Source of the DNA: Styela clava | Taxonomy: Eukaryota | Reading direction: 5' to 3' | Length of the DNA stretch: 64,000 nucleotides | Assembly: GCF_964204865.1 (NCBI RefSeq) | Contig: NC_135260.1 | Location: forward strand, 5,704,001 to 5,768,000 | The notes under the pieces: generated by a model | What the model was told of the DNA's origin: nothing | Databases searched by the model: none | Seen by the model: the letters and a program-made list of their open reading frames with translations, nothing else | Position numbers and translations under genes: made by a program | Shown here: positions 12,470-50,800 of the stretch, one piece after another | Numbering within the stretch: the stretch's first letter is position 1 | Layout of the letters: each line of letters starts with the position of its first letter

Positions 12470-15400
12470 ATGTGGAAACATTCAAAACTCTTCAAATGCA
12501 AGTGGTTGTTTATGCAGATAATTGGTGAGATCTTACTTACATTAAGTTTAGTTACACAGTCTGCTGTTACACAACCAACTGTGATGGGTATTATTAGTTG
12601 TTATTCGAAAGTTTCAAATTGATTACAATTACAGTTATTTGAAATTGTCTTACCAAATTATAATAAGCAACTTCTTTAAAATCAAATCGCGGAAAAATGA
12701 GGTTCTTTAACTTTTGTTTTCACAACATATTTCACATCCAGATTCAATATGAAAATATTATATAATTTTAACTACTTCGACTTTTAAATAACTCGAATGT
12801 TTAAAATAGGAATAATTAAGTTTTATACAATTATTCATGGATTTAAGAATCTGTAATACAATTGAAAAAGTATTAATGAAAAATATATTTGATTTATATA
12901 CTATTTTCAATTAAAAAAAAATGTTATACTGCAAATGAATAACTCAATTCCTTTTTAGCATTTAGTATTGGTCTGAATGAAGCAGCACAATGCACTGATT
13001 GTAAAGACACCATACTTGGAACAGAGAGCCAGAATACCACATATGGACCAAGTAATGAATACAACTGCAATTGTGATTGGACAATACCAACAAGTATGGA
13101 CACAGATCATGAAACTGCAGTTGTTCTGCTGCTACAAAATGTTTCACTGCCAATGACAACAATGAGTAGCAGTAGTCCGGACTGCACTGGAACGATCAGA
13201 TTCCCAAGTAAGTACAATACTTGAATATGCTAGATCCATTAAATACTAAATCACAATTATCGGTCGACAGACATGGCTGCAGTCAAGATTTTTCAAAAGG
13301 GGGTGTTTAAAATCATTAATAACCATGTAGAGCTGACGAAAACAATAGGCAGTTTTAACAAAAGTATGCATGTAAATTTGTACACAATAACAGCTGGTAC
13401 TCTTCTGGTTATCCTGTCTTTTTTAAAAGGGTCTTCTGGTTATCCTGTAATTTTTGAAAGGGGGAGGGCCAGGGATGGCCATTTCCGAATACTAAACTAT
13501 TCCGAATACATTCTAAAATAATGTTTTCGAATCTGGAATTCCGAATACATTCTAAAATCGAAAATAAAACATTTTTGTTTTAGTTCATTAAAACCCAGTA
13601 AATTAGGAAATAAGCTTCAAAAGGAATATCAGAATGAAGCCACAGACCAACAGTATATGTACACAAAGTAATTGATAGTTTATAGCTATCAATAAAAAAT
13701 AATAGCAACTTGCGACACAGTCAGTTTATTAAAATTATTCACTTTGTACAAATGACCATATGAAAAGATAGCCAAGGAGTTGGGGTGACGCTTTCTATTA
13801 TTGGTACCATGATATTACGATAATAGTCAAGTCTATTGACAAAAATACTACATGTATTCAGATAATTGTGTATATTTTCTGTGAGTAATCAAATTTATTG
13901 GCAATACAGGCAACTGAAACAAGCCACAACAATCGAAAATCCATTATGTCTTTAAAAATTCTAATATTTAAGCTTAGAGTATTCTACTACCTACCAGTAT
14001 ATTTGTATATTAATTTATGTTAACCAAATTGTTAATATGTGTAACATATTGTTGTGTTTGAAATTAGAAATAAATTAACAGAGAATAGATGACCACCACT
14101 GCCAGCCGCGCAGCCAGGATTTTCGAAATCGGAAATTCCCATTGCCGCCTGTAACACCCACCGCGATTCCGCGCTCGTTGAAAGAGCCGTCTTTTCAGCG
14201 TATAATGATCATCCTGTTACATAAAATATTCAATCCATGACAACTACGAGATTCTAAAATATCTTTATATATTAATTTAATGTGTACAACGTAACTCGCG
14301 GTTGCTTCTTCTTACGTCAAAAAAAAACATTATTATTCGGTCCACAGCGATCTGTGACCTAAAACTACGAGATAAACCGCCTGATGTATTTAATTTTAAT
14401 ACGTATTTTTGCAAACTTGCCAACTCGGTATCGCCGTTAGAAAAATCTCAAATAATGATATAAAATCCTGTTAAGTGTAGTGTATAATTCATTTCATACA
14501 ATGAATATACATACAAAGTTGAGCAGTAAATTAAAAATACATATTTATTGCCGCGATTATGCCACCTGTTAAAAGAGTCGACTTTTACAACAAATAATAT
14601 AACAACGAATATATATTTTTCTGTTGTGCAAAGTGATGGTTCGTGACCGATACGGGCCTATTTAAAATGTCTTGTTTTATTAATTTAATTGTCTCCAATT
14701 TAACCTTCGGTTGCGTCGACAAAATAAAATCCTCACCACTCTTATATACCATTGCAATCCGCGATCATAAGAATAAAAACGTGTGGTAAACTGCCCGATT
14801 AAATAATGTTCAGATCCGTATTTTGCGAATTCGGCAAATATTTAGATGTAGGCCTACTTGTTAACAGTGACTCCACTCCACTCAATCGAAATGCTGACAC
14901 TCTGATTATTTTTAGATAAAACCGTTCGAAAAATCCATAAATCTGCTGTAACATCTCAGAGTAAAATTTATTTCATCACAATAAAATTGATTGAATATAC
15001 TTTGGATTAATTATATTAAATACATCCTCACAAACCGGGAAAAAGTCGCGTTTCAAATATTCGACGGCAATTCAAAGTAATGAATAATCAGGCAAATCCC
15101 GCCCTCAATTCGTGACGATATGTTTCTAAACGCCCGACCAAACATAATATGTACGGTAGGCCCACAAAATTTTGCGATTTTCCCTGCCTAGAAAAGCATT
15201 TTATAAATTTTCACGGGTTTCAATAAAACTTATATTGTTTGCGGTTTTATTTTCAGTATTTTAAATTGCCGCTTTACAATCAAAAAGTTGCGTTGTCTTC
15301 AGAAACTCGCCGCCGATGATTGTATTTACCAGATTCACAATTCTGTGCGCGTACGTTATCGTGGAACAAATTTGTGGAAAATTTTCGTTTTAGAGAAAGT

Positions 15401-16461
15401 AACACAAACGTAAAAGCGTTTACGGCCCAAATAACACGTTACGCTGATGGGTGATGAAAACAATCACGCGCAAGTTTCTATCGAGAATGTTTTCATTCAA
15501 CGGAAACGTCTTGGAAGCGGCGTCGAAAATGTGTGACGTCACACAAATATTCGATATTCTTATGAACGCTAATTCCGATATTCGAATGACGAGATATTCG
15601 AATACATTCGAATACTTTATTCGAATTGGCCATCCCTGGGGAGGGCGTTGAACCTGAAACCCCTATCTGACTGCGCTACTGTCTACAAATATCAGATTTC
15701 CTGGTACCACTAATAATTTATTCAAAAATACTAATGTGCTTTTTACAGGCACTGATGGACACAGTTGTTATTTCACAAGCAACTACTGTCTTGTATTTGC
15801 AACTGCATCAACCATTTGCAACATCAGCAAAATCAGAAAGAAAATTTCAGTTGCAAATCACACCTGTGATTCAATCATTCCATGGAATAAAGCTGGAGGA
15901 GGCCCATACAAGATACAATACTATGCAGGAAACCATGCTGGTTACACAAAATACTTCACAATACAATACCTTGTGGTGGACTGCAGATCTCCAACAGCCA
16001 CTTTTAAACCAAGTATCGGTAAGTCATAAATAGCAAAGAAACATTTAGTTCAGCAGTAAAACATCCAAACCTAAAAATGAACTTTTTTCTTTCAAATTAC
16101 AGCAACAACAAATGGATGGGAAACAACAACAAAAAATTCAGAAGAAATTTCAACAACACTAAAAGATGAACAAATTTCAAAGGATAAAAGTAATGAAAGT
16201 TGATTTGTCAAAACAATAGCAATAATCCAATACACAATGACATTAAATTTAAACTTATTATAAATTCCAGTTACCAAAGCTGCGCAGCAAACAACAATAT
16301 CGGATTCAGACAGAACTGTATCTCATTCTACAACTGATTTGGACAAAAACGCCACCGTTACCACGGGAACCAATGGAAGTTCTGCTTCACTGATGATCGG
16401 AATTCCAGTGTCAGGAATAGTTGGTTTTATCTTTGCAGCTTTGTCAATGTTTTTCATATAA
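12470..16461 (+). CDS. Copy 3: CUB-like receptor truncated immediately after the TM helix (tailless, ~283 aa; decoy or pseudogene)
   Basis: Exons 12470-12524, 12959-13207, 15749-16018, 16103-16189, 16271-16461. TAA at 16459-16461 where copies 5 and 8 have CAA. No tail exon is visible before the next copy. Intron 2 contains a 2.2-kb hAT element. Confidence 0.75.
13470..15638. mobile_element. Non-autonomous hAT (Ac-type termini) DNA transposon, ~2.17 kb, in intron 2 of copy 3
   Basis: TIRs CAGGGATGGCCA...TGGCCATCCCTG; perfect 8-bp TSD GGGAGGGC (13462-13469 and 15639-15646); subterminal TTC(C)GAATA repeats at both ends; empty site in copy 2 near 6295-6305; no long ORF. Confidence 0.9.
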
Positions 16462-16827
16462 AGGTAACAAGTAAAACAACACATAGTAGCAATATTCTCC
16501 TCGCAATACTTTCACTTTTTATATTGTTATTGAATATTGCATTGCATTTACAATATTGTTTTAAGAATTAAGTATTCATATATCCTCACATATAAGCCGA
16601 ACCCCTAAAAACTGACTGCTGAATTTATAAAATTTTGCATGGAAGCCGACATTACAAATCGTGACACGCCGTATGTACCTATCACAGCAAATGGTTGCAG
16701 AAAAGAATTATTAAAAATGAAAAACTTTTATTGTTCTGTTTTACTTTTTCTTAAAATCGATAGGAATTGTTTCAAAATCATTTCAATCCATCCTCACTAT
16801 CGCTTATCGTATCACTATCGTATAGAA

Positions 16828-17443: not shown

Positions 17444-20262
17444 AAGTAGATAATTAATAAATTGACCAATCAAGATCTTTTGCTTGAGATGCCAAGATTA
17501 CTATGCTTCTGAGACAATACCAGCCTACTCTCAATAAAAATAAACTTAATAGTGCAATTACAAACAAACACTCGAGAACCACTGAATAATAAATTAATTG
17601 ACCACGGATGAGTATAATTGTAAATTTACGATTATTTCGTTTTATGACCATTTGATAACTGGCAAATGTCAGTATTTTTACAAGTTTTTTCATAGCATTA
17701 AACTTGAAAATGCTTAGAACTACATTAAAGGAATACTTGCCTGATTTCTTTTTGTTTCTCTTTTAATTTTTCAACTTCCTCTCCTCACAAATATGTTGTT
17801 ACACAGATTCTGCAAAATGAATGAAATAAATTATACATAAATCTAATAAAATTTTGCAGTTTTTATCTACAAAAGTCTTCTTCTGGTTCGTAACTTAAGA
17901 TTTATTCAACGTAAGAAGCAGGTCATAGTATTAACACTTTTCACTACAATCAAGGCTCAAGAAAAGCAGTCAATGGAAGCTAACGAGAATACAACCTAAT
18001 AACACATCTTCGTTGTTAAAATACTATAATAACTTGTTAACCAAGCTCATGTTACAAACTATATCTCTCCAGCCTAAGCTGTAAAAAAACAGCCAGTGAG
18101 ACATATAAGATTATTAAAATTATAAAGAGCATAATCCTTGCAGTTCAGCAAACTCTAAGGAATACATAACCAATTGGGATAAGTTTAGGAATGAATTGTT
18201 AAGTAGAACAAAAAGAGAAGAAAATGAAACCGAAATCTATGGGGACAAAACTAATCTAACAGGTATTAATAAGCTGTCCAACATATATTGAATATTGTAT
18301 TAAAAATTGTATTCTTCTATTCTTGAATAATTCAATATAGATTGCGGAGCAAGGCAATGTTCCCTGAAGTCTGAATTGTATTAGGAGAGAGATAAGCAAC
18401 ATTTATGAATCTGATTCTTATATATGTTCAATGTAATGAAAAAAACCTGACTGAAGTATATAAAAATATGAATGAGGGGAACCACTACCCGATTACCTCA
18501 ATAAAAGGGAAAATAAATGTGGCTGATGAGTCAGTTAATCTACCATTTATGGTGACTGTGGATATGGTCTCACCCAAAAACACATGCCCACTTTAAAAAA
18601 TTTATCAAACCACAATAGACAGATTGAAATATTGAGCGTGAGAATTCCAGAAGTTTGAATTAGAAAATAAGTATTTACACAATAAATTTATTGAATGACC
18701 CACGTGTAGAGTAGACTGTAGGTTAGGTCAACTGCCACCATTGAGAATTGATTTTTTAAATGATTGTTCAACTACATTTTAAATTCTAACTATTCATTAA
18801 TAATTAATTTTAGATATTATTATAATTTGTTGTAAAATAATGTTATTTGTATACCAGTGGACATAAACTTTATGTATTCTAAATATACACATTTTCGATA
18901 AGGTGCATGCCACATTAATTTCCTAAATTAAACCTCAAATTATTGGGCACTCACGACTAGTTTGGCTGATCTAACAAACAAGTTATGAATAATGCTCAAC
19001 AAGAAATATTTTTCCACCCAAGCATTTTGAAATGTTTGATCTTTTCGCAAACTTCTCTATGTTTTACAGACATTATATTGCTATCCAAAAATCCAACTAA
19101 ACTAAATTAATAATTATCAGTAGAGGTTACGCGAGACTAACTTCCAATTCTTGGGCTAATGAATCCGTGTGCGTATAATGCAAAGATGCTGTAGCAGGAA
19201 TAAAACTACCATAATATGACATTCAAAATCCTGCTGCACACTAACACAAATATATTTCTGTAACGTTTCGTCCGACCAAAATTAGAATTCCTCAGACAAG
19301 TAGTTTACAACAATGATAATTGATAATTACAATTAGCAGTTGGGTCATTTAGCAAGTAAAAAACATACAACTGATATTTGCTTTCGCTTTCCCCACTCAC
19401 AACAAACTGAAGTCAAACAACAGTCATTATTATGACATAAATCGATGTACAGATAATAATAAATTTAATAGGCAATTTGAGTTTTTATCCGATAAAAGTG
19501 AGGTCATTGAAGGACCAATACACCAACTTGTAAGTTTTAGTGTATTTATATGAAGTGAGATGATACATACAATTAAAAAAAGTGCCAATATTGCCAAAGT
19601 GTAAGACACGCGGGGCAAGATTAACATTATGCAGAAATAGAAGGTTAACTCAATATCAAGTTAATGTATTATCAAAATAGCCCCAGTCATGTGACTATGG
19701 AAGAAATCTCATTCAAATTTTTTGTAGGTTTGCTATTTCAATAGTATCTTGTAGCCTAGCCTATGAAGTAATTTCTCCATTTCTGAACACTGAACCCCAT
19801 TTCAGTCACCTTACTACCTTATACTCATCAATCAATAGCAAAAAAAACAGTATTGAATCTGCCTGGTTGCCCTGTGATTCAAATGTCAGATTTATTACTT
19901 ACGAGGAAATGATCACAAACCTACAAGATGCCAAGATAACATGTGAGATGTGACACAAGTAGATGATCATCGAGCTTTAGTGTTATGATAGTGTTATGAT
20001 ATTTCGCCCACATGTTTAAATCTAATAATGAATATCAAGTCAGTAATCATTACTTAGTAGCAACCAGAGAGGTGTTTCATAGTCACCGATTCACATTAAC
20101 AGAAGAGATTCTGAATATAAATCAGAAGCTTGTTACATTAAGTGTTAGGACAGGTCTTGTATTTTGTCAGTTGGATTTCGTCTTTATCTATGTTAGTACT
20201 GCGTAATGAATCAAGTGATTGAAGAAACAAAGCAGAGAGAAGCTTCTGAAGATAAACTCAAC

Positions 20263-22635
20263 ATGTGGAAACATTCAAAACTCTTCAATTGCAAATGGTT
20301 GTTTATGCAGATAATTGGTGAGATTTTGCTTACCGATACATAAAAGTTACACCTGAAAAAATAAGTTGCCATTTGTCAAACAAAAACATAATAGCCTGAA
20401 GAATTCTCATCCGAAGTCATTTAATGGAATAATAATTTTAATACTAGATTTTCATTATTATGGGATTGCTCAATTGTTTAAAAATAGGAATAATAAAGTT
20501 TTATATAATAACCTTGAATAACCATCAAAAGTATTTGCAAGATATTTCAATTTGATTAAAAAACTTATTTCTTTGTAGCACTAAGCATCAGTCTGAATGA
20601 AGCAGCACCATGCACTGATTGCTCCCATTCAATACTTGGAACAGAGAGCAAGAATATCAAATATGGACCAAGTAATGAACACAACTGCAACTGTGATTGG
20701 ACAATACCAACAAGTATGGACACAAATCATGAAACTGCAGTTGTTCTGTTGTTACAAAATGTTTCACTGCCAAGAACAATTGGTACTGGAAGTACAGAAT
20801 GCTCTGGAGCAATCAGATTTCCAAGTAAGCCGTATACTATACTATTTTACTAATACTATTCTAATATGAAGGAACAATAAAAAAACACATTAGTAAATAC
20901 ATAATTGTATCAATACTTTTACAGGCACTGATTCTCACAGATGTGATTTTGCAAGAAACAACTGTTTTGCATCTGCAACTGCATCAACCATTTGCAACAT
21001 CAACAAAATCAGAGAGAAAATTCCAGTTGCAAATCACACCTGTGATTCAATCATTCCATGGAATGAAGCTGGGGGAAGTCCATATGAGATACGATATTAT
21101 GCAAAAAACTTTGCTGGTTACACGAAATACTTCACAATTCAATATCTTGTGATAGATTGTAGATCTTCAACAACCACACCAAAACCAGGTAAGCAATATA
21201 CTTTACTGTTCGCAAATCTACACCAACACACATTTTTCTTATTCTCATACAAAGGTTAAATTTATATTCAGCAACAACAATGCAACAGAAACAAACAACA
21301 AAGGTTCCATTAACACTTGCAAGAATTATATGTGAAACAACAACTTTTGAAACCGCCAAAACTACTGGTATGAATGAATTAACAAGTTCAAGATTAATTT
21401 TGTATGTGAATAATCGATTAGGCAAACAAAATTAGTTACCTCCATATTGGTACACACACTTCTGGAGTGCCGTTGTTTTTAAGATTAGATACAGTTTGTA
21501 TGTAAACAACAGACTCGTGTGCAATGTTTGGCAGTTTAACACAGGGTGGCAAAATTGGGTACTCCCGTAGTATATGTATAATGGTAGGGTTAGGTCGTTT
21601 TTTTCCAATTTTCCAATATTCCAATATTCTAGTTCTATTACTATTTCGGGAACTGTCTATGTTAGACAAGTGAATATACCCCCTGCCCATAGACTTCAGT
21701 CCCTTTACACAAGTTATTTACCTACAAAATCAGTTACCTCCATATTGGTACAAGTACTTCTGGAGCGCACAAAATTGGGTAGGCAATGCCGAACCTTCCA
21801 AACAATAGTAGATCCTTACTCAGAGGTGACTGCTTGTTGTGGCCTTGTTGAGTGCGTAAGGCGCATAATTAGTCTTATAAAACGATTCAAAAATTGTGTA
21901 AAATTACAAGAAGCATAATAATTTAATTCTAGAAATGGCTACAAACACAAAACAAACTGCCAGTGATAAAAAATGTATTGAAAACTCAGATTCTACATCC
22001 CTAACAATGATTGCAGTAGGTGCAGCATCAGGATTAATTGTCGGAATCATCATTGGAGTTCTGACAACTTGCTTGATGCAGAGGTGAAATTACAGTTTCG
22101 TAAAATTAAGATATTTTAAGGTTAATATACTATTCAGTTTAGCTTGCTTGATGCTCAAAAAATTAAACACCTTCAAAACCTTCTCTAAGGGCTAACCAAT
22201 GCAATATCACCAGAATTTTGTTATTACTGAAAAGAATGTTTTTATTTTTGACGGAGATTGCCTTTTACACTCATTTGGTGGACAATCTGCTCAATACAAA
22301 ACAAAAAATCTTTATTTTGTATCATTTCAAATAAAATTAGTGAAACAAATAAAATTACATTGTTATTCCAGTCAAATAAATTATAAAAAGATCAGCGCAC
22401 CATAACACACATTATCAAAATTTATAGATTCTTGAGAAAAAAGAAATTGAAAAACTCAATGAAAACGCAGAGCAGTCAACAGCATCAATATAACGCCATG
22501 AAAAATGCAGCATATGAAAATCATGAACCAGCTTCAAACGAAAACGGATACGAAGTTATAATTCCAGTTGATAATAAGAATGAAAGACCATATGAAGAGA
22601 TAAAATGTGGGAAGGAATCTGAATATGAAAAATAA
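20263..22635 (+). CDS. Copy 4: intact CUB-like receptor with divergent stalk/TM and ITAM-like tail, ~339 aa
   Basis: Exons 20263-20317, 20579-20824, 20925-21188, 21272-21367, 21933-22083, 22428-22635 (1020 nt, open). TM MIAVGAASGLIVGIIIGVLTTCLM; tail AYEN...ENGYEVI-IPVDNKNERP-YEEI...EYEK*. Confidence 0.88.
21558..21769. mobile_element. Merlin-like MITE (~210 bp) in an intron of copy 4
   Basis: Imperfect ~23-bp TIRs GGTACTCCCGTAGTATATGT...GTACTTCTGGAGCGC; 8-bp TSD CAAAATTG. GG termini with an 8-bp TSD fit the Merlin/IS1016 superfamily (classification is inference). Confidence 0.7.
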
Positions 22636-26688: not shown

Positions 26689-28160
26689 CTATTATGATCA
26701 ATGTGAATGAAGCATATCAATGCCCTAGTTGTCCCAAAATAACACTTGGAACAGAGAACAAGAATATCACATATGGACCAAGTAATGAGCGGGACTGCCA
26801 ATGTGATTGGACAATACCAACAAGTATGGCCACAGATCATGAAACTGCAGTTGTTCTGTTGTTACAAAATGTTTCATTGCCAATGACGGCTGGTAGTGGA
26901 AGTAGAGACTGCTCAGGAGAAATCAGATTTCCAGGTGAGTATTCAATACTCTTACAAAAGTAAAACTAGTTGTTAATGAAAATGAACTTTGTGCAGGTGC
27001 TAGTGGACACAGATGTGATTTTGCAAACTACCAGTGTATTGTTTATACAACTGAATCAACCATTTGCAACATCAACATAATCAGAGAGAAAATTCCAGTT
27101 GCAAATCACACCTGTAATTCAATCATTCCATGGAATAATGCTGGAGGAAGTCCATATAAGATACAATACTATTCCAGAGGCTATGTTGGTTACACAAAAT
27201 ACTTCACAATACAATATCTTGTGGTAGATTGCAGATCTCCAACAACCACTTTTAAACCATGTAAGTCATAAACAGCAAAAACATTCAGTTTAACAGTGAA
27301 ATATCCAACACTAAAAATGAATCTTTTTTTTTCAAAATACAGCAACAGGAAATGGATGGGAAACAACAACAAAGAATCCAATAGAAATTTCGACAACAGA
27401 AAAAACTGAACGGACTACAAAAAACAAAAGTAATAAAAGTTTATTTGTCGAAACAATAGCAATCATCCAATACACAATCATAGTCAAAATTATTATAAAT
27501 TTTAGTTACCGAAGCTGAGCAGCGAACAACACAATCTGATTCCGGCATAACTAATTCTCATTCCATATGTGATTTGGACAAAAACATCACCATCACCACG
27601 GGAATCAATGGAAGTTCTGATTCACTGATGATCGCAATTCCAGTTTCAGGAATAGTTGGTTTTATCTTTGGAGCTTTGTCAATGTCTTTCATACAAAGGT
27701 AAGAAGTAAAATAACAGTAGCAATATTTTCCCCTCGTTACTTTCAATTTGTATATTGCTTTTGAATATTGTTTTGAGAAATAGGCATAAGTCATTCCGGG
27801 TTTTGTTCGAATATGATTAAACAATATGCTATTAAATATTTTTAACCCAGGTATTGCAACAAGAACAAGAAGAAATTGAAGAACAAAGATTCAATGGAAA
27901 TGGGAAGCATTCAACATCCAGAGCCAACTGTCCATAAACGAACAACATATGAAAACTACACACCAACATCAGATGAAAGTGGATATGAAGTTCCGAATCA
28001 AGTTGATAACAAGAATGAACAAAGTGGATATGAAGTTCCGAATCAAGTTGATAATAAGAATGAACAAAGTGGATATGAAGTTCCGATTCAAGTTGATAAC
28101 AAAAATGAACAACAATACGAAGTTATGACAACTGGAAAAGAATATGAATATGAGAATTAA
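26689..28160 (+). CDS. Copy 5: CUB-like receptor with three tail repeats; family-type exon 1 not found
   Basis: Exons 26689-26934, 26997-27260, 27343-27429, 27506-27698, 27851-28160, all open in frame. Tail has 3x SGYEVP(N/I)QVDNKNEQ. No MWKHSK exon between 22636 and 26688. Confidence 0.8.
27978..28112 (+). repeat. Coding 45-bp tandem repeat (3 units) in the cytoplasmic exon of copy 5; also 3 units in copies 6 and 8, and 2 units in copies 7, 9, 10
   Basis: AGTGGATATGAAGTTCCGAATCAAGTTGATAACAAGAATGAACAA = SGYEVPNQVDNKNEQ. Confidence 0.9.
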
Positions 28161-42855: not shown

Positions 42856-45755
42856 ATTTAGGGAGTAAGAAAGGTTATCAATGTTGCAATCACAAATCAT
42901 AATAAAACTCTGACTCCGATCAAAGCCTTATCTACTGAAATATGAATAAAATAAAATAACATGATTTTTCCAGTTTCCAACTGTACCAACTCCTTATTGT
43001 CAGTTGAAGGCAAATAAAAATAAATTTGATCTCGAAAGCAAAATAATCTACCATTTATGGTGACCCAAGATATAGATCCAACTCAAAATAAACGCATGAA
43101 TGCATTGCTTAATCAACCTACATTACTATAATTTAAACTAATAAACTGACAAGCAAAAATAATTGCCAGTATTACTAAAAGAACACTTTAAATTGCAATG
43201 TAAGAGTATCTGAAGATGGCATACTTCATGATTGTCAGTCGACATTCTGACACTTTCTTCAACTATGAGTGATAAATCAACTACCTATATACCAGAATCA
43301 ACGACGCTCATAGTATGTTATACAATAAATATCTATAATCAGCAGTATTTGATGAAACAATCATCCATGAGCATTGCTAATAATTTTAGTTTCCATTATT
43401 AGTCATAGGGGGAAACTCATTTGAATTAATTATCCAGAATTTATAAGTTTGGACATTATTAGTAGATTGAAATAAATAACAACAATTTACAAGATATGCA
43501 ACTCAAGAGTCCTGGTACACACTAAAACAGATATAATTCTGTAACGTTTCATCTGACCAAAATCAGACTTCCTCAGACAAGCAGTTTACAACAATGACAA
43601 GAAAAGAACAATCATGCGGTTCAAATGTGAAGATAAATAAATTTGTTTGAAAACAATTGTGACCCAAATAATGAGTTGATTATTTATATTTGGAAACAGA
43701 TTGCGACGAAAAAATACAATTGGACTCTTGAATTGCATAGTATGGTATTTTTATTCCTACTACAGCATTCTTGCATTACATGCATACGATTCCACTAGCG
43801 CAAAGGCATTGAGAAAGGATTGGGAGTTAGTCTCACGCAACCTGTACTGATAATTTACAAGATGTTCCAATAATACGCAAAAGACAATTCCAAGTTTCGT
43901 TTGGCTTCATTTTTCAGCAATGTGGTTGACAAAGGAATCTCACTAAAACTTTACAATAGGTTTGACATCTCAAATGTTTTCTTTCAAAATGGCCTACAAG
44001 AGTATTTTCTCATTCCAAAACAGGATCCAGTCCTACAGTTGAGTAATCAGTATTCCCGTAGTATGTACCAGGTTAGGGTTAGGCAATAATTTTATTCCGA
44101 TTTTTCTTATTTTAGTTCTATCACGAGTTCGGGGACTGTCTATGTTAACCAAATAAATATATCCCCTGTCTGAAATAAATTATACATATGTCAAATAAAT
44201 ATTTGCAATTTTTATTCACGAAAGTCTTCTTCTACTTCGTGAATTAGATTTATTCAATATGAGATTTATCCAAAATTAATGATAAACATGGGGGCCTTGT
44301 GGGCTAAAACTGTCCGGTAGAGGGCCCCGTGAAACAGAAAAGGTTGGGGACCACAGTTATATAAACTTTTCAATCTAATCAAGGCTCCAGACAAGCAGCC
44401 ACAGGGTATTATGAAAAATACAACTTGTATAAACAACTTTATACCCAAAGTTAGCTTTGTCATTCATTAAAACTATAATAATTTGTTAACCCAACTCGTG
44501 TTACAAACTATATCTCTCCAGCAGAAGCTGTAGAAAAACAACCAGTGAAACATATAAGACTGCTGAAATCATAAACAGCATAATACTTGCAGTTCAGCAA
44601 ACTCTAAACAATACATAACCGATTGGGATAACTTTAGGAATGAATGATAAGTAGAACAAAATGAGAGCAAAATGAAAACCAAAATCTATGATGCCCAAAC
44701 TAATCTAACAGGTATTAAACTGTCCAACATATATTGAATATTGTGTTAAAAATTGTATTCTTCTATTCTTGAATAATTCCATATAGATTGTGAAGCAAGG
44801 CAATGTTCCCTGAAGTCTGAATTATAATAGGAGAGAGATAAGCAACATTTATAAATCTGAATCTTATATATGTTCAATGTAATGAGAATAACCTGAGTGA
44901 AGTATATAAAAATATGACATATATATAAATATTTTTTTTTTTTTTGTATTTTATTTAAGAAAAAAATATAAAAATATGAATGAGGGGAACCACTACCCAA
45001 TTATCTCAATAAAAAGGAAAATAAATGTGACTGATGAGTGAGTTAATCTACTTTTTATGGTGACTGTGGATATTGCCCCACCCTAAAACCCACACCCATT
45101 AAAAAAAATTCAATAAATAGTTATAGATAGAAGATGGCTGGATATCTGAAGATGACATACTTCCTGATTGTCGATTGACATTCTGACAATTTCTTCACCT
45201 ATGAGTGATAATTCAACTTCCTATAAACCAGAATGAGCAGTATTCAGTGAGCATTGCTAATAATTTTAGTAGAGGGGAACTAGTTTGAATTAATTTTCTA
45301 GGATTTATAAGTTTAGACATTATTAGTAGACTGAAATAAAAGAACATTAATTTACAAGAATATTTCTGTAACGTTTCATCTGACCAAAGACAGACTTCCT
45401 CAGACAAGGAGTTTACAACAATCAGGAATCTTGGAAAGTATAGTAATGTTCATTCCTTCTACAGCATCCTCGCATTATACGCATACAAATCGACAAGCAT
45501 AGAGGGCATAGAAGACGGATGGGAATTAGTCTTGCGTAACCTAGCACACCATTTACAAGATGTCGCAATAATACAGAAATGACATTTTCAAGTTTCCTTT
45601 GACTAAAAATCTTCCACAAACGGTTTTCAGCAATGTGGCTAAGAATAAAATATCACTTTACAGTATCTTTGACATCTCAAAAGGTTTATTTCAAAATGGC
45701 CTACGAAAGCATTTTCTCATTTCAGAACACGACCCAGTCCTATAGTGGAGTAATC

Positions 45756-45961
45756 GGTACTCCCGTAGTATATGTACCAGGATTAGGCCATGATTTTTTT
45801 CCGATTTTCCTTATTTCAGTTTTATTACAAGTTCGGGGACTGTCTGTGTTGGCCAATTGAATATACCACATCATAGGTTTCAATCAATTCATACAACTTG
45901 ATGTAAAGTAGGAGAACAAAATTAATTACCTCCATATTGGTACATACAATTCTGGAGTGAC
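45756..45961. mobile_element. Merlin-like MITE upstream of copy 8
   Basis: TSD GAGTAATC/GAGTTATC; same TIRs and body as the other copies. Confidence 0.68.
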
Positions 45962-46386
45962 GAGTTATCTATAGATATATCAATGAGTAAGTATATTAGC
46001 AATTCCAAATAATGTCCATCAAGCACTTGCAATCTTACACTTTTATACAAATGACAAACAAAAATGCCAAGACAATACATGACACAAGTAGATCATCGCT
46101 ATGTTGTAATGATATTTCGCCCACATCCTAATTATAATAATAAATATAAGGCAGTAATCATTACAAAATAGAAACCAGAGGGAAGTGTTTCATAGTCACT
46201 GATTCCTATTAACAAGGAGAAATTCTGAATATAAATCAGAAGCTTATTACATCAAGCGTTGAGACAGGTCTTGTATTTTATCAGTTGGATTTTGCCTTTA
46301 GCTATGTTAGTACTGTGTAATGATTTGAGTGATTGAAGAAACAAAGCAAAAAGAAGTTCAAAGAAGTTGCTGAAGATAAACTCAAC

Positions 46387-47800
46387 ATGAGGAAACATTC
46401 AAAACTCTTCAATTGCAAATGGTTGTTTATGCAGATAGTTGGTGAGATCCCACTTACATAAATAGTTCCAAATCAAGAAATAAATGTACATTTGTTACCC
46501 AAAAACATAGTAGCCTGATGAATTCTCATCCAAAGTCATTCATGAAATAATAATTTTAATATTAGATTTTCATTAATATAAGATTTCTAAATTGTTTAAA
46601 AAGAAGAGTAATGGAGTTTTATACAATATAATTCTCAACCATGTATTAGATTGAGAAAATATCAATTCTATACATATAAACTTGTTTTGGGCTTTATGAG
46701 ACTGATGAAAATTGGATGGATTTCGCAATGTTGTAATTGTAAAAACTTATTTCTTTATAGCACTAAGCATCAGTCTGAATGAAGCAGCACCCTGCACTGA
46801 TTGTTCAAATCCAATACTTGGAACAACCACTTCTAAACCAAGTAAATCTTAAACAGCATAAAAAATTCAGTTCAAAAGTAAAACATCCAATCTTGAAATA
46901 AACTTTCCTTTCAAATTACAGCAACAACAAATGGATGGGAAACAACAACAAAATATCCAGAAGAAATTTCGACAACACTCAAAGCTGAACAGACTACAAA
47001 GCTGAACGGTCTACAAACGGAAATTCCGACAACACTGAAAGCTGGACCAAATACAAAAGACAAAAGTAATGAAATTTTATTTGTCAAAACAATAGCAATT
47101 ATCCAATACACAATCATAATAAAAACTAAACTTCATAAATTTCAGTTAGTGGAGCTGAGCAGCAAACAACACTATCTGATTCAGACAGAACTGAATCTCA
47201 TTCAACAACTGATTTGGACAAAAACATCACAGTTACCACGGGAACCAATGGAAGTTCTGATTTATTGACAATTGCAATTCCATTGTCAGGAATAGTTGCT
47301 TTTATCTTGGGAGCTTTGTCAATCTTTGTCATACAAAGGTAACAAGTAAAACAACACTTAGTAGCAATAATTTCTCCACAATACTTTCACTTTGAATATT
47401 GTTTTGAAAATTTGGCGCAATTTCAAGGTTTCGTTTGGATGTGGTTCAACAATATGCTAATAAATATTTTTATTAATATTTTCAACCCAGGTATTGCAAC
47501 AAAAACAAGAAACCGAAAAAGAAAGATTCAATGGAAATTGGAAGCATCCAACATCAGCAGCCAACTGTCCATGAACGAACAACATATGAAAACTACACAC
47601 CAACATCAGATGAAAGTGGATATGAAGTTCCGAATCAAGTTGATAACAAGAATGAACAAAGTGGATATGAAGTTCCGATTCCAGTTGATAACAAGAATGA
47701 ACAAAGTGGATATGAAGTTCCGATTCCAGTTGATAACAAGTATGAACAACAATATGAGGTTGTGAGAAGCGGAGCAGAATACCAATATGAAAATGCGTGA
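46387..47800 (+). CDS. Copy 8: ectodomain-deleted paralog (signal peptide, stalk, TM, tyrosine tail), ~260 aa
   Basis: Exons 46387-46441, 46761-46841 (5' of exon 2 fused to 3' of exon 3: ...CTDCSNPILGT/TTSKP), 46922-47065, 47146-47338, 47491-47800 (783 nt, open; all splice sites intact). Confidence 0.8.
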
Positions 47801-50800
47801 ATGAGTGAAATAAATTCATCCAAACCTTTTGAATTGAAAAACTCGTGTTTTTTAGAAAAAAACACAAGTTATGGATTTCTCTCATGAAAAACTAAAATAT
47901 TTATTTGTATTGAAGTCCAATTCATTTTGACTTCTGACTGCAGCAATGACAAATTGTGGAAGATTTTATAATTTGTGTTGTATTTTTTTTAATCAGATCA
48001 TTGTTTTATCAGAATTCTTCACATAATATATGAAGGATAGGGTTTTGAACTAAATATGAGTAGTAAGTATATTAATATATTTGAGTGTCCATAAAAAGCA
48101 ATAATCTGAGAGGGATTGTCTGTACCCCTTCTTGTCATATTTCCGTTTGTCTGCATTTGATGGAAGTGTGCTCATAATGAATAAAAATGAACGATTATGT
48201 TTCTGAATATCTTGAAAAATTTGATCACTATTTAGCTCTTTAAGCTTCGCTGAACTAATAATGGGTTATAAAGTCATGCTAACAATTGAGTTAAAAAAGC
48301 TAACATCGAGACATCAATAATTATGAGCAAAAGTCGTAAATACTGAATTTAGGAAACTATGATAGTTCCACTCTGTACAGGTTTCACTTTCAACAACAAT
48401 TTTTTGGCTAAAACATTTTAGTACGCACTTCAGCGTTTGAAATGAACTTCATCCTACGTGTCCTAGCTGTATTCCTAATAGCATTGTGCTCAATTATTTC
48501 AAGTCATTATCTACTAGAAACACTGTCCCTTAGAATGTCATTTGACACTTACAAAAAATAGTCTTTTTAGTAAGCAGTTCAGTTTTTTTAAGTCTTTCAA
48601 ACTTCTAGAGCTTGAGACCATTCTTTGATTAAATTTTGGAGAAATATTCATTGCCTACTATAATTATTTCTAGACCCATGCATTAATAATCTTGTGTGTT
48701 GACTTCTGATAGAAGTAAAAAAAAAAAACAGAAAAGAATTTCATATCATGGCAAAGAGAAAAACAAATAATACATGCTTAAATTGGTGTAATGGTTGATT
48801 TTTCAAGTGAAACTATCCCAACAATATAATTTTCAACCCTGTATGAGATTGAGAAAATATCAATTCTATACATATAAACATGTTTTTGGCTTTATAAGAC
48901 TGATAAAATATGGATAACTTTTTTTGTTAATTCAAATACAGTAGACGAAATATAATTATTTTCGAATCGATTTGAATACCGGTAATTGATTTTGGACATT
49001 CCAGGGAACCTACCACTTTCAAACTAATATTTGCGACTGTTTCTGCATGTCTTTTTAAAATATCTTAGTGTTTTGTTTTGTTCAAACCATAATCAGTTTG
49101 CTATTGTTTAAATATAACATAAATAAATTTATTGTAAAATATTGAGTGCTGAACATTATTAAACAATATTTAATGGGAGTCACGACAAAAAGTATCACGA
49201 CACCAGAAAATGCTGTGATTACCTAATCGCCCATAATCTCGCAGTTTTAAAGCAGTTAGTAGTATGGAATAGGTTTGAAACTGAACTTCAAATGAAATTT
49301 GAAAATGACTGAAAAAGTTTAGTTGCAGCAGATAAGATGCAAAAATCCATTGACAGTAACCAGTAATGCTAACCAGTTTACTGATCTCATAAAATTCTGT
49401 GAGACGGTTTTATAGAACCGAAGCGAACCAGCTGAATTCCACCACTGAGCATATCCTACTAGCATAAATACTTACTGAGTGAGTGTGCATGAGTAGGGAC
49501 AAATGGACCAATAAATTTTTGCTTGAGATGTCAAGATGACTAGCGGTATGTTTTTATGACAACAACAGCCTACTCACAATAAAACTAACTCAAAAGTGAA
49601 ATTACAAACAAACACTCAAGAACCACTTGATAATTAATTAATTAATTACTGTTGAGGAGAAGTTTAATTTACAACCATCTCTTATTTATGAACATCTAAT
49701 AACTGAAAAATTTCGGTATTTTTACAAGTATTTTAATAGCATTAAATTTGAAAATGATTCTACATTCTAAGAATGACTCGACTGATTTCTAATTTCTGTT
49801 TTGTTTCCTTTTTCAACTTCCTATTCTAACAAGTATGTTGTCACACAACACAGATTCTGTAAATTGAATGAAATAAATTATACATTCATGTCTAATAAAG
49901 TTTGGCAGTTTTCAAAGTGCAAAAGTCTGGTTAGTAAAGAAGATTTATTCAATGTAAGAGGGAAGGTTATATTCCCAGAAAACTTTCACTCCTATAAAAG
50001 CTCAGCACAAAATAATAAATAAAAAAGTGAATTTTGGAAATTTACTCACGAAAGTAACAGTTATCAGCGGCAGAAATCACAAATCATAATGAAACTCTAT
50101 GACTCTGATCAAAACCTTACCTACTCAAAAAAACAAAACAGCTGAATTCAAAAAAGCATAATCTACCCAACTTCACCAATTCTTCATTGTCAGTTTACAG
50201 CAAATAAAAATAAATTTGACCTCAATAGATAAATAATCTACCATTTATGGTGACTCTGGATATATCTCCAACTCAATATAAAAGACACATGAATTCAATG
50301 CTTCATCAAACTGCATAAATATAATTTAAACTAATAAACTGATAAGCGAAAAATAACTGTGAGTATTACTAAAGAAATTCATCTCGCAATGTACGACTAT
50401 CTGAAGATGGCATACTTCCTGTTAGTCGGTTGACATTCTGACACTTTCTTCACCTATGAGTGATAATTCAACTTCCTATAAACCAGATTCAACGATGCTC
50501 ATGGTACATAACACAATAAATATCTATAATCAGCAGTATTTGATGAAACAATCATCAGTAAGCATTGCTAATAATATTAGTTTCTATTATTAGTCATTCG
50601 AAACTCATTTGAATTAATTATCCAGAATTTATAAGTTTGGACATTATCACTGCTACATACTAAGACAGATATATTTCTGTAACGTTTCATCTGACCAAAA
50701 TCAGACTTCCTCAGACAAGCAGTTTACAACAATGACAAGAAAAGAACAATCATGCGGTTCAAATGTGACATAAATAAATTTGTTTGAAAACAATTGTGAC

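What the first reader, a model, noticed from the sequence alone, without database searches (positions are those of the whole stretch)
46761..46841. Copy 8 lost the whole recognition domain in frame, leaving a transmembrane-adaptor-like protein
Seen: exon 2 runs ...CTT GGA ACA then jumps to ACC ACT TCT AAA CCA, the end of exon 3. The junction sits on an AACA microhomology (ggAACAgag in exon 2, ccAACAacc in exon 3). The deletion removes most of exon 2, intron 2 and most of exon 3, yet the frame, all splice sites and the promoter block are intact. The stalk is internally expanded and the tail has three repeats. Established: LAT, PAG and NTAL are ectodomain-poor adaptors with juxtamembrane Cys and multiple YxN sites. 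Inference: a signalling co-receptor or adaptor born from a receptor, able to pair through its remaining CxxC or TM helix.
Basis: partly seen in the sequence, partly recalled or inferred. Interest (0 to 1): 0.78.

Follow-up and report, generated by a model that had tools for sequence, protein, structure and literature searches.

The report
Headless receptor gene copies in sea squirt
One gene in a sea-squirt receptor cluster really has lost its outer sensing domain, but four neighbouring genes share the same loss and nothing yet shows these headless copies are used, so they look like ordinary by-products of a fast-changing gene family.

Summary
Copy 8 (46387-47800, +) is a five-exon, 260-codon open gene whose exon 2 jumps at an AACA (46822-46825) from the start of the domain to the end of domain exon 3, removing 142 codons. 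The organism is Styela clava; the gene is RefSeq LOC120347070, "uncharacterized".

Three things change the reading.
- The junction is not private to copy 8. Five paralogs on the same contig carry it: four are intact and one is broken.
- Their variable coding sites look neutral: 14 replacement against 3 silent.
- In two RNA runs, no contig crosses the deletion junction. The contigs that carry the stalk exons run on upstream into an undeleted domain exon, a full-length sister that is absent from this assembly.

The lost domain has no Pfam match. A low-confidence model resembles CUB domains (Z 6.2-7.6).

The LAT/PAG/NTAL comparison fails on two defining features. About 107 residues of Thr/Ser-rich stalk remain outside the membrane, and the CxxC is extracellular; only one cysteine lies next to the membrane on the cytoplasmic side.

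Most likely these are young headless by-products of birth-and-death evolution, spread by duplication and gene conversion. An adaptor or decoy role is not excluded. The scan had already noted the same CUB-like array on DNA before this window.

The parts
45500..49000 (+). Core unit shared at 97-99% identity by the five headless paralogs; flanks fall to 84-95%
   Evidence: Identity in 500-nt bins against the four other loci; megablast of the neighbourhood
46101..46386 (+). Promoter / 5' UTR block homologous to the other family members
   Evidence: blastn 83.6-87.3% to seven other copies in the window
46387..46441 (+). Exon 1: start codon and hydrophobic signal-peptide-like N-terminus
   Evidence: translation; hydropathy; spliced to exon 2 position in RNA contigs of paralogs
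46761..46841 (+). Fusion exon 2: first 65 nt of domain exon 2 joined in frame to the last 16 nt of domain exon 3 (holds CTDC)
46822..46825 (+). AACA microhomology at the deletion junction
   Evidence: blastn left homology ends at 46825 and right homology begins at 46822; side-by-side sequences
46922..47065 (+). Exon 3: Thr-rich stalk, 19 aa longer than in the nearest full-length paralog
   Evidence: spliced GT..AG in RNA contigs X5/X6
47146..47338 (+). Exon 4: stalk with two N-glycosylation sequons, and the membrane helix (residues 133-156)
   Evidence: spliced in X5/X6
47491..47800 (+). Exon 5: basic juxtamembrane stretch with one Cys, tail with 10 Tyr (YENY, 3 x YEVP, YEVV, YQYENA), stop TGA
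47613..47749 (+). 45-nt coding repeat, 3.0 copies (2, 2, 5 and 5 copies in the other headless paralogs)
   Evidence: TRF; per-copy translations

Best explanation
Copy 8 is Styela clava LOC120347070. It is one of five headless members of a Styela-restricted family of about 40 single-pass receptor genes. Each full-length member has one Cys-rich, probably CUB-like outer domain, a Thr-rich stalk, a membrane helix and a tail of YxxP/YxN motifs.

Shown: one deletion at a 4-nt AACA microhomology fused the start of domain exon 2 to the end of domain exon 3, in frame. The same junction is now present in five array slots.

Inferred: the fused gene was copied by block duplication and kept alike by gene conversion. 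The copies now drift neutrally: four are open, one is broken, and replacement changes occur at the neutral rate. A non-deleted sister is what is seen transcribed in two RNA runs.

Inferred function: if translated, the product would be a ligand-blind, glycosylated membrane protein that still offers the family's docking tail. Its most plausible effect would be a weak ligand-independent sink or scaffold for the kinases and SH2 adaptors used by its full-length relatives. It is not a dedicated adaptor kept by selection.
For: - The same junction is present in 5 of 5 close paralogs L001-L005. It is exact in L001, L002 and L004; L005 has one change just before the junction and L003 is mutated around it.
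- A genome-wide 27-mer search with up to 3 mismatches finds 6 places: those five plus the full-length copy at 27203.
- 4 of 5 copies are open. L003 has a +2 frameshift in exon 4 and a stop in the tail.
- Pairwise pN/pS is 0.42-2.5, with 9 of 10 pairs above 1.
- Variable coding sites are 14 replacement: 3 silent in the four intact copies.
- There are no indels in 631 nt of intron, so open frames are expected at this age.
- The core is 97-99% identical and the flanks 84-95%. Site patterns are mutually incompatible, which fits gene conversion.
- RNA: in X5 and X6 the introns after exons 2, 3 and 4 are spliced as modelled. However, the contigs run from 46822 upstream into 119 and 238 letters that end in the close of an undeleted domain exon. 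Bin depth at 46814-46887 is fully explained by contigs that do not cross the junction.
- That undeleted sequence has no place in the assembly with fewer than 3 mismatches.
- Family: 41 matches to the domain exon in the genome. All 21 hits and all 36 hits of two protein searches are S. clava proteins.
Against: - Four of five reading frames, all splice sites and the promoter block are intact. An older RefSeq entry (P0014) is also open.
- The unit has reached five slots, which selection could also explain.
- RefSeq lists two isoforms for two of the genes. As I recall, that usually needs transcript support; I could not check it.
- Contigs show presence, not absence. In X6 about 17 of 26.7 depth units on exon 3 are not tied to the undeleted form.
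- The X5 and X6 animals may lack the headless genes altogether.
- The substitution counts are small. A full-length twin pair gives 3:3 in the same exons, and the difference is not significant (Fisher p = 0.28).
Confidence: 0.55

Rival explanations
1. One reading: the headless genes are functional signalling proteins. They would be a transmembrane adaptor, co-receptor or dominant-negative decoy kept and amplified by selection, pairing with full-length paralogs through the stalk Cys pair or the membrane helix, and docking SH2 proteins on the YxxP/YxN tail.
For: - 4 of 5 copies are open with intact splice sites, and a further open allele exists in an older annotation.
- All tail tyrosines are kept in the intact copies, and the number of YEVP units varies in frame: 2, 2, 3 and 5.
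- The unit is amplified to five slots.
- RefSeq models them with two isoforms each for two genes.
- YxxP motifs bind CRK/CRKL SH2 in the CUB-bearing scaffolds DCBLD1/2 (PMC6029619, abstract and passages). YxN is the Grb2 motif of NTAL and LAX (PMC3342071, passages).
Against: - The 14:3 replacement:silent ratio equals the neutral expectation.
- One copy is dead.
- No RNA contig crosses the junction in 2 of 2 RNA runs laid.
- Introns and flanks of the core are as alike as the exons, so the likeness comes from conversion or youth, not from constraint.
- The short-ectodomain and cytoplasmic-CxxC features of TRAPs are not met.
Confidence: 0.3
2. The junction arose as a fusion of two neighbouring paralogs: a deletion of several kb from exon 2 of an upstream gene to the end of exon 3 of the next gene. 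It was not a 0.5-kb loss inside one gene. The product is the same; only the history differs.
For: - Within the window, the 5' half is closest to the copy at 19992-20643 (82.9% and 92.9%). The 3' half is closest to the next gene, at 27241-28157 (77.9%).
- The upstream flank 44469-44917 is closest to the flank of the copy at 19992 (89.6% against 80-85% elsewhere).
- In X5, the undeleted sister's stalk exons are seen, but no contig has copy 8's exon 2 sequence beyond 46786.
Against: - Genome-wide, the closest 5' relatives (89%) are other full-length genes, at C14:5661751 and 5645109, not the copy at 19992.
- Mosaic genes are common in this array, so a single mosaic parent is equally possible.
- Holes in contigs prove nothing.
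Confidence: 0.4
3. The deletion is an assembly error.
For: None found. Tandem arrays are prone to collapse in general.
Against: - Five separate loci carry the junction, each with its own substitutions.
- A DNA-run contig crosses it (X1 record 5), and Hi-C raw reads give a mean depth of about 6 over that bin.
- An older RefSeq protein has the same junction and 9 private residues.
Confidence: 0.01

Closest known systems
Transmembrane adaptor proteins LAT, NTAL/LAB, PAG/Cbp and LAX (PMC3342071, abstract and passages read)
   Same: [quoted passage not shown] There is a Cys next to the membrane on the cytoplasmic side.
   Different: TRAPs have only a few residues outside the membrane (LAT 4, PAG 16) and no signal peptide is described for them. 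Here about 107 Thr/Ser-rich residues with two N-glycosylation sequons follow a signal-peptide-like start. LAT, NTAL and PAG carry a cytoplasmic CxxC; here there is one Cys (RYCNK), and the CTDC is outside the membrane. No sequence similarity was found. Expression and phosphorylation are untested.
DCBLD1 / DCBLD2 (ESDN): CUB-bearing scaffolding receptors with 7-8 YxxP motifs that bind CRK/CRKL after Src-family or Abl phosphorylation (PMC6029619, abstract and passages read)
   Same: The parent family joins a CUB-like outer domain to a single membrane helix and a tail of repeated YxxP motifs (YEVP). This is the best functional analogy for the tail that the headless genes keep.
   Different: There are no LCCL or discoidin domains. 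No sequence homology was shown. The headless genes lack the CUB-like domain. The YEVP units here are a young 45-nt tandem repeat of 2 to 25 copies.
Truncated and partial members of vertebrate tandem immune-receptor clusters under birth-and-death evolution (KIR, LILR and the like; recalled, no paper read here)
   Same: A dense tandem array with full-length, tailless, headless and dead members. Block duplication and gene conversion are evident, and domain loss occurs by deletion.
   Different: The fold and lineage differ: a Styela-only family with a CUB-like rather than an Ig domain. No immune role has been shown for this family.
The Styela clava CUB-like receptor array itself
   Same: Copy 8 shares the promoter block, exon 1, exon phases, membrane helix and tail with the family.
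   Different: It lacks the 142 codons of the outer domain. Its stalk belongs to the rarer 'TTNGWETTTK' type and is 19 aa longer.

Membership tests
Styela clava CUB-like single-pass receptor family (unnamed) | Shared promoter/exon 1 block, exon phases, membrane helix and YENY...SGYEVP...YQYEN tail | tested here: met
   blastn 83.6-87.3% on promoter plus exon 1, and 86-94% on the tail exon. A tail-exon phmmer search finds P0002 at 85% identity, E 8.6e-45. All 21 of 21 hits are S. clava family proteins.
Styela clava CUB-like single-pass receptor family (unnamed) | The Cys-rich outer domain of about 150 aa (C.C.W.IP...HETAVVLL...FTIQY..DC) | tested here: not met
   It is absent: 142 codons are missing between LGT and TTT(S/F)KP. 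Copy 8 is a derived, headless member.
CUB domain (Pfam PF00431), for the domain that was lost | Sequence match to the Pfam CUB profile | tested here: not met
   There is no CUB row even at E <= 10, either for the full-length proteins P0002 and P0016 or for the single exons.
CUB domain (Pfam PF00431), for the domain that was lost | CUB beta-sandwich fold | tested here: inconclusive
   AF2 model of P0002 from 19 paralogs: mean pLDDT is 42.5, and the domain (residues 33-180) is beta-rich with 10-residue block means of about 42-81. In VIA-align, ranks 1-13 are all CUB domains, with Z 6.2-7.6 and rmsd 2.9-3.3 A over 101-111 residues. Foldseek finds no match at E <= 0.001, but its weak rows are mostly CUB. 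The tool itself warns that Z under 8 may only reflect a common arrangement.
Transmembrane adaptor proteins (LAT/NTAL/PAG class) | Extracellular part of only a few residues | tested here: not met
   132 residues precede the membrane helix. About 107 remain after a signal peptide of about 25 aa; 35% are Ser+Thr and there are two N-x-S/T sequons.
Transmembrane adaptor proteins (LAT/NTAL/PAG class) | Single membrane helix and a tail without an enzymatic domain but with several tyrosine motifs | tested here: met
   Hydrophobic stretch at residues 133-156. The tail is 104 aa with 10 Tyr, including YEN x2 and YEVP x3. No Pfam domain is present.
Transmembrane adaptor proteins (LAT/NTAL/PAG class) | Juxtamembrane cytoplasmic CxxC palmitoylation motif (present in LAT, NTAL and PAG; absent in LAX) | tested here: not met
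   The only cytoplasmic Cys is C160 (RYCNK). The CxxC (C30, C33) lies in the extracellular N-terminus.
Transmembrane adaptor proteins (LAT/NTAL/PAG class) | Expressed, tyrosine-phosphorylated on stimulation, and recruits SH2 proteins | not testable with these tools
   Only contig-level RNA data were available. No junction-crossing contig was found in X5 or X6.

The most novel reading that the evidence does not exclude
The headless genes are a transmembrane adaptor or decoy caught at birth. One microhomology deletion turned a CUB-like receptor into a ligand-blind carrier of the family's YxxP/YxN docking tail. Selection, or biased gene conversion, then spread it to five slots of the array, while the undeleted sister still segregates in other animals. 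This would give a natural presence/absence series for testing how receptor arrays evolve their own signalling modulators.
Probability: 0.2. Interest if true: 0.65.

Novelty: new member of a known kind. Interest (0 to 1): 0.3.

Why it matters
If the headless copies are used, they would show how a signalling adaptor or decoy can arise in one step from a receptor inside a fast-evolving tandem array, in the closest invertebrate relatives of vertebrates. As it stands, the value is descriptive.

- It documents, for an unstudied Styela-only receptor family of about 40 genes, the usual signs of birth-and-death evolution: headless, tailless and dead members, gene conversion, and coding tail repeats of 2 to 25 units.
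- It points to a structural difference between animals: an undeleted sister that is transcribed but absent from the reference assembly.
- The genes are already in RefSeq as uncharacterized proteins. No paper naming five of the family's RefSeq gene ids, copy 8's among them, was found. Two broader searches listed no paper on such a family by title or abstract.

Tried and rejected
- Pfam on single exons and on RefSeq proteins gave nothing above cut-off. The weak TMEM154 and RIFIN rows (E 0.0016-0.037) cover the stalk and helix only, so I treated them as compositional.
- Foldseek against PDB found no match at E <= 0.001.
- Mis-assembly is rejected.
- A near-identical full-length twin in the assembly as the source of the undeleted RNA contigs is rejected. 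The 27-mer search finds only the five headless loci plus a copy with 3 mismatches. The 29-mer from the RNA contigs has no place with fewer than 3 mismatches.
- Sharp unit ends or transposon-borne copying of the headless unit: the apparent left end at 45232/45244 is only an indel, and homology continues beyond it.
- A baseline pN/pS from the gene upstream of copy 8 against its counterparts failed, because the fixed offsets mis-aligned the sequences (intron p about 0.40). I dropped those two rows and kept only the copy-5 twin pair.
- Open frames as evidence of constraint is rejected, because introns show 0 indels in 631 nt.
- Literature: no paper holds any of the five family gene ids searched, LOC120347070 among them. 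Searches on Styela clava receptors and on ascidian CUB / allorecognition listed nothing on this family (listings only). Supplementary files were not opened; they could hold expression tables for these loci.
- I did not re-lay reads on the other RNA runs (X7-X11, X13, X14).
Full report
WHAT IS THERE

The window is G000:C14:5704001-5768000 of a 376.8-Mb genome. NCBI names attached to the encoded proteins identify the organism as the ascidian Styela clava. The window is AT-rich (GC 0.30-0.37). It holds a head-to-tail array of paralogous genes, all on the + strand.

Copy 8 has five exons: 46387-46441, 46761-46841, 46922-47065, 47146-47338 and 47491-47800. Every intron is GT..AG. The total is 783 nt, giving 260 codons and a TGA stop.

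The RefSeq protein XP_077974210.1 (P0001, "uncharacterized protein LOC120347070 isoform X1") came back from a search with the tail exon alone. It is identical to the exon-by-exon translation.

THE OBSERVATION

In all 7 other copies in the window whose exon 2 start was located, the sequence reads ..cttggaaca|gagagcaag... Copy 8 continues instead with accacttctaaaccaa|gt, which is the end of domain exon 3 as in the copy at 27203. In blastn, left homology ends at 46825 and right homology begins at 46822, so AACA is shared between the two sides.

The loss is 142 codons on P0002. It is 491-529 nt if it occurred within one gene.

- The tail has 3.0 copies of a 45-nt unit at 96% match.
- The stalk exon encodes 47 aa against 28 aa in P0002.
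- The promoter block is 83.6-87.3% identical to seven other copies.

An in-frame outcome has a prior of one in three, and a 4-nt microhomology is ordinary for end-joining or slippage, so neither is remarkable in itself.

IT IS NOT A ONE-OFF

A search of the whole genome with 46842-47800 found four more loci at 94-98% identity on the same contig, 82-122 kb upstream. All carry the same junction. It is exact in L002 and L004; L005 has one change just before it and L003 is mutated around it.

A 27-mer across the right side of the junction, allowing up to 3 mismatches, occurs at 6 places in the genome. These are the five loci plus the full-length copy at 27203, which has 3 mismatches.

RefSeq annotates four of the five loci: LOC120347070, LOC144429893, LOC144429950 and LOC144429758.

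Copy by copy:
- L001 (copy 8) is open and has 3 tail units.
- L002 is open and has 5 units.
- L004 and L005 are open and have 2 units each.
- L003 is broken, by a +2 frameshift in exon 4 and a stop in the tail.

An older RefSeq protein (XP_039272827.1, P0014) has the same junction, 3 tail units and 9 residues not seen in the four current proteins. I recall, but did not check, that it comes from an earlier assembly. Either way it is a different allele or copy.

HOW THE COPIES RELATE

Over about 3.9 kb the five loci are 96.0-98.5% identical. In 500-nt bins, the stretch 45500-49000 is 97-99% identical to each of the other four loci. Identity falls to 90-96% in the next kilobase on either side, and to 84-93% in well-aligned bins further out, including the full-length gene upstream.

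Variable sites split the copies in mutually incompatible ways, for example {L002, L005}, {L003, L005} and {L002, L003}.

I infer an older block duplication whose headless core has been kept alike, or overwritten, by gene conversion. A younger spread of the core alone would give the same picture.

SELECTION

Pairwise Nei-Gojobori pN/pS over 257 full codons is 0.42-2.5, and 9 of 10 pairs exceed 1. The counts are small: 1-3 silent and 3-17 replacement differences per pair.

Counting variable sites once each:
- All five copies give 23 replacement and 5 silent sites.
- The four intact copies give 14 and 3.
- The neutral expectation is 78% replacement (binomial p = 1.0).

Intron divergence (1.1-2.4%) is no higher than pN (0.5-2.8%). 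No indel occurs in 631 nt of intron among the five copies, so an open frame at this age needs no selection.

For comparison, full-length copy 5 against its twin shows 3 replacement: 3 silent in the stalk/helix/tail exons and 9:3 in the outer domain (intron p 2.8%). The contrast with 14:3 is not significant (Fisher p = 0.28).

I see no sign of constraint. Power is low.

READS

One search found 15 runs. I laid four of them on 46000-48200.

DNA runs:
- X1 shows no splice joints and even depth across introns, so I take it as DNA. Its 163-nt contig (46791-46953, 1 mismatch) crosses the junction with 31 letters on the left.
- X15 (Hi-C raw reads, about 6% of the run read) gives a mean depth of about 6 over 46814-46887.
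- Both runs show C at 46893 (8 of 8 reads in X15), as L002-L005 do, where copy 8 has T. This DNA support is therefore for the junction in general, not for copy 8 in particular.

RNA runs:
- X5 and X6 show spliced contigs, so they are RNA.
- Introns 46841/46922, 47065/47146 and 47338/47491 are removed at GT..AG as modelled.
- However, X5 record 11 (564 nt) consists of exon 5 (first 90 nt), exon 4 and exon 3 with 0, 1 and 0 mismatches, then 46822-46841, then 119 further letters. Those letters end in the close of an undeleted domain exon 3.
- X6 has the same arrangement, with 238 such letters.
- Mean depth in the bin 46814-46887 is exactly accounted for by contigs that do not cross the junction. 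In X5, 5.8 x 20/74 = 1.57. In X6, (9.63 x 20 + 21.7 x 12)/74 = 6.12.

The sister's exon 3 end has no place in the assembly with fewer than 3 mismatches. No protein of that design came back among the 21 hits to P0001. I infer that it is a structural difference between animals or an unassembled haplotype. At the variable sites, the X5 contig matches L004, and the X6 contig is a combination not present in the reference. The sister therefore lies within the headless clade's own diversity.

Caveats:
- Contigs drop rare forms.
- In X6, about 17 of 26.7 depth units on exon 3 are not tied to the undeleted joint.
- The X5 and X6 animals may not carry headless genes at all.
- RefSeq lists two isoforms (one skipping exon 2) for two of the genes. 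As I recall, that usually rests on transcript evidence I could not see.

WHAT WAS LOST, AND WHAT THE FAMILY IS

The domain exon 3 peptide has 41 matches in the genome. Thirty-five lie in C14:5.529-5.787 Mb, three at 6.16-6.19 Mb on the other strand, one on C13, and two divergent ones at 19.05 Mb.

Two protein searches returned only S. clava proteins, all "uncharacterized": 21 of 21 and 36 of 36 hits. Only one of them carries precomputed Pfam entries (the stalk/helix families TMEM154 and RIFIN).

Pfam gives no CUB row even at E <= 10. An AlphaFold2 model of P0002 built from 19 paralogs is poor overall (mean pLDDT 42.5). It does give an eight-strand beta domain at residues 33-180, with 10-residue block means of about 42-81. 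Foldseek finds nothing at E <= 0.001. VIA-align ranks 1-13 are all CUB domains (Gpr126, C1s, MASP-1/3, TSG-6, neuropilin, cubilin, Kremen, PCPE-1), with Z 6.2-7.6 and rmsd 2.9-3.3 A over 101-111 residues. I call the domain CUB-like but not proven.

WHAT THE HEADLESS PROTEIN WOULD BE

- A hydrophobic N-terminus shared with the family.
- About 107 residues outside the membrane: 35% Ser+Thr, two N-glycosylation sequons and the CTDC pair.
- A membrane helix at residues 133-156.
- RYCNKNKKPKKK, with a single Cys.
- A 104-aa tail with 10 Tyr: YENY, three YEVP, YEVV and YQYENA.

YxxP is the CRK/CRKL and Abl SH2 motif of the CUB-bearing scaffolds DCBLD1/2 (PMC6029619). YxN is the Grb2 motif (PMC3342071).

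Against the definition of LAT/NTAL/PAG-type adaptors in PMC3342071, the helix and the tyrosine tail fit. The very short ectodomain and the cytoplasmic CxxC do not. The protein could work like such an adaptor, or like a sink for the same partners, but it is not one by these features.

ORIGIN OF THE JUNCTION

Within the window, the 5' half is closest to the copy at 19992 and the 3' half to the next gene, at 27241. The upstream flank also favours the copy at 19992. That would fit a fusion of two neighbours.

Genome-wide, however, the nearest 5' relatives (89%) are other genes, and mosaic genes are common in this array. I leave this question open.

VERDICT

Copy 8 is a new member of a known kind: a truncated paralog in a birth-and-death receptor array. 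Interest is 0.3.

The earlier notes of this scan on the same array (s1-815900, s1-825756, s1-825905, s1-826058) agree with what I tested here.

Noticed in passing
L003 = G000:C14:5627755-5631664 (outside the window): This headless paralog is a pseudogene. It has a +2 nt frameshift in exon 4, a stop inside a tail unit (SGY*VP), and extra changes around the junction.
   Followed up: yes
RNA runs X5 and X6, contigs joining at window 46822: Transcripts carry an undeleted domain exon 3 end followed by 46822-46841 and stalk exons 99-100% identical to the headless clade. This gene is not in the assembly (no place with fewer than 3 mismatches).
   Followed up: partly
L011:1637-2718 (G000:C14, about 5616299-5617380): A paralog's tail exon holds 24.0 copies of the 45-nt unit at 96% match. 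The frame is open and encodes about 25 SGYEV(P/I/M) units. This is an extreme expansion of the tyrosine-motif repeat.
   Followed up: partly
window about 45752-45973: A stretch of about 210 nt upstream of copy 8 matches at 83-87% on at least ten other contigs (C1, C2, C3, C5, C8, C13, C16-C19). It is probably a dispersed short transposon.
   Followed up: no
window 46623-46717 and 48821-48915: A 95-nt piece of intron 1 recurs 1 kb downstream of the gene at 90.5% identity. An X6 contig of 1260 nt runs from 47742 through the 3' flank to that copy, so the region downstream of the stop is transcribed or carried over in that run.
   Followed up: no
RefSeq proteins P0009 and P0010 (LOC120347070 and LOC144429893, isoform X2): Annotated isoforms skip the 81-nt fusion exon 2, joining the signal peptide directly to the stalk and removing the CTDC pair. 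No exon 1 to exon 3 joint was listed in X5 or X6.
   Followed up: partly
P0033 (LOC144429676), the copy at window 12470-16538: This family member ends right after the membrane helix, so it is tailless. Its stalk is of the same rare type as the headless genes. The array thus holds both headless and tailless forms.
   Followed up: no
P0011 (LOC144429758 = L002): The RefSeq model uses a different first exon (MSVLS...MWKHPKLF) from the exon 1 that lies in the L002 unit (MRKHSKLFNS).
   Followed up: no
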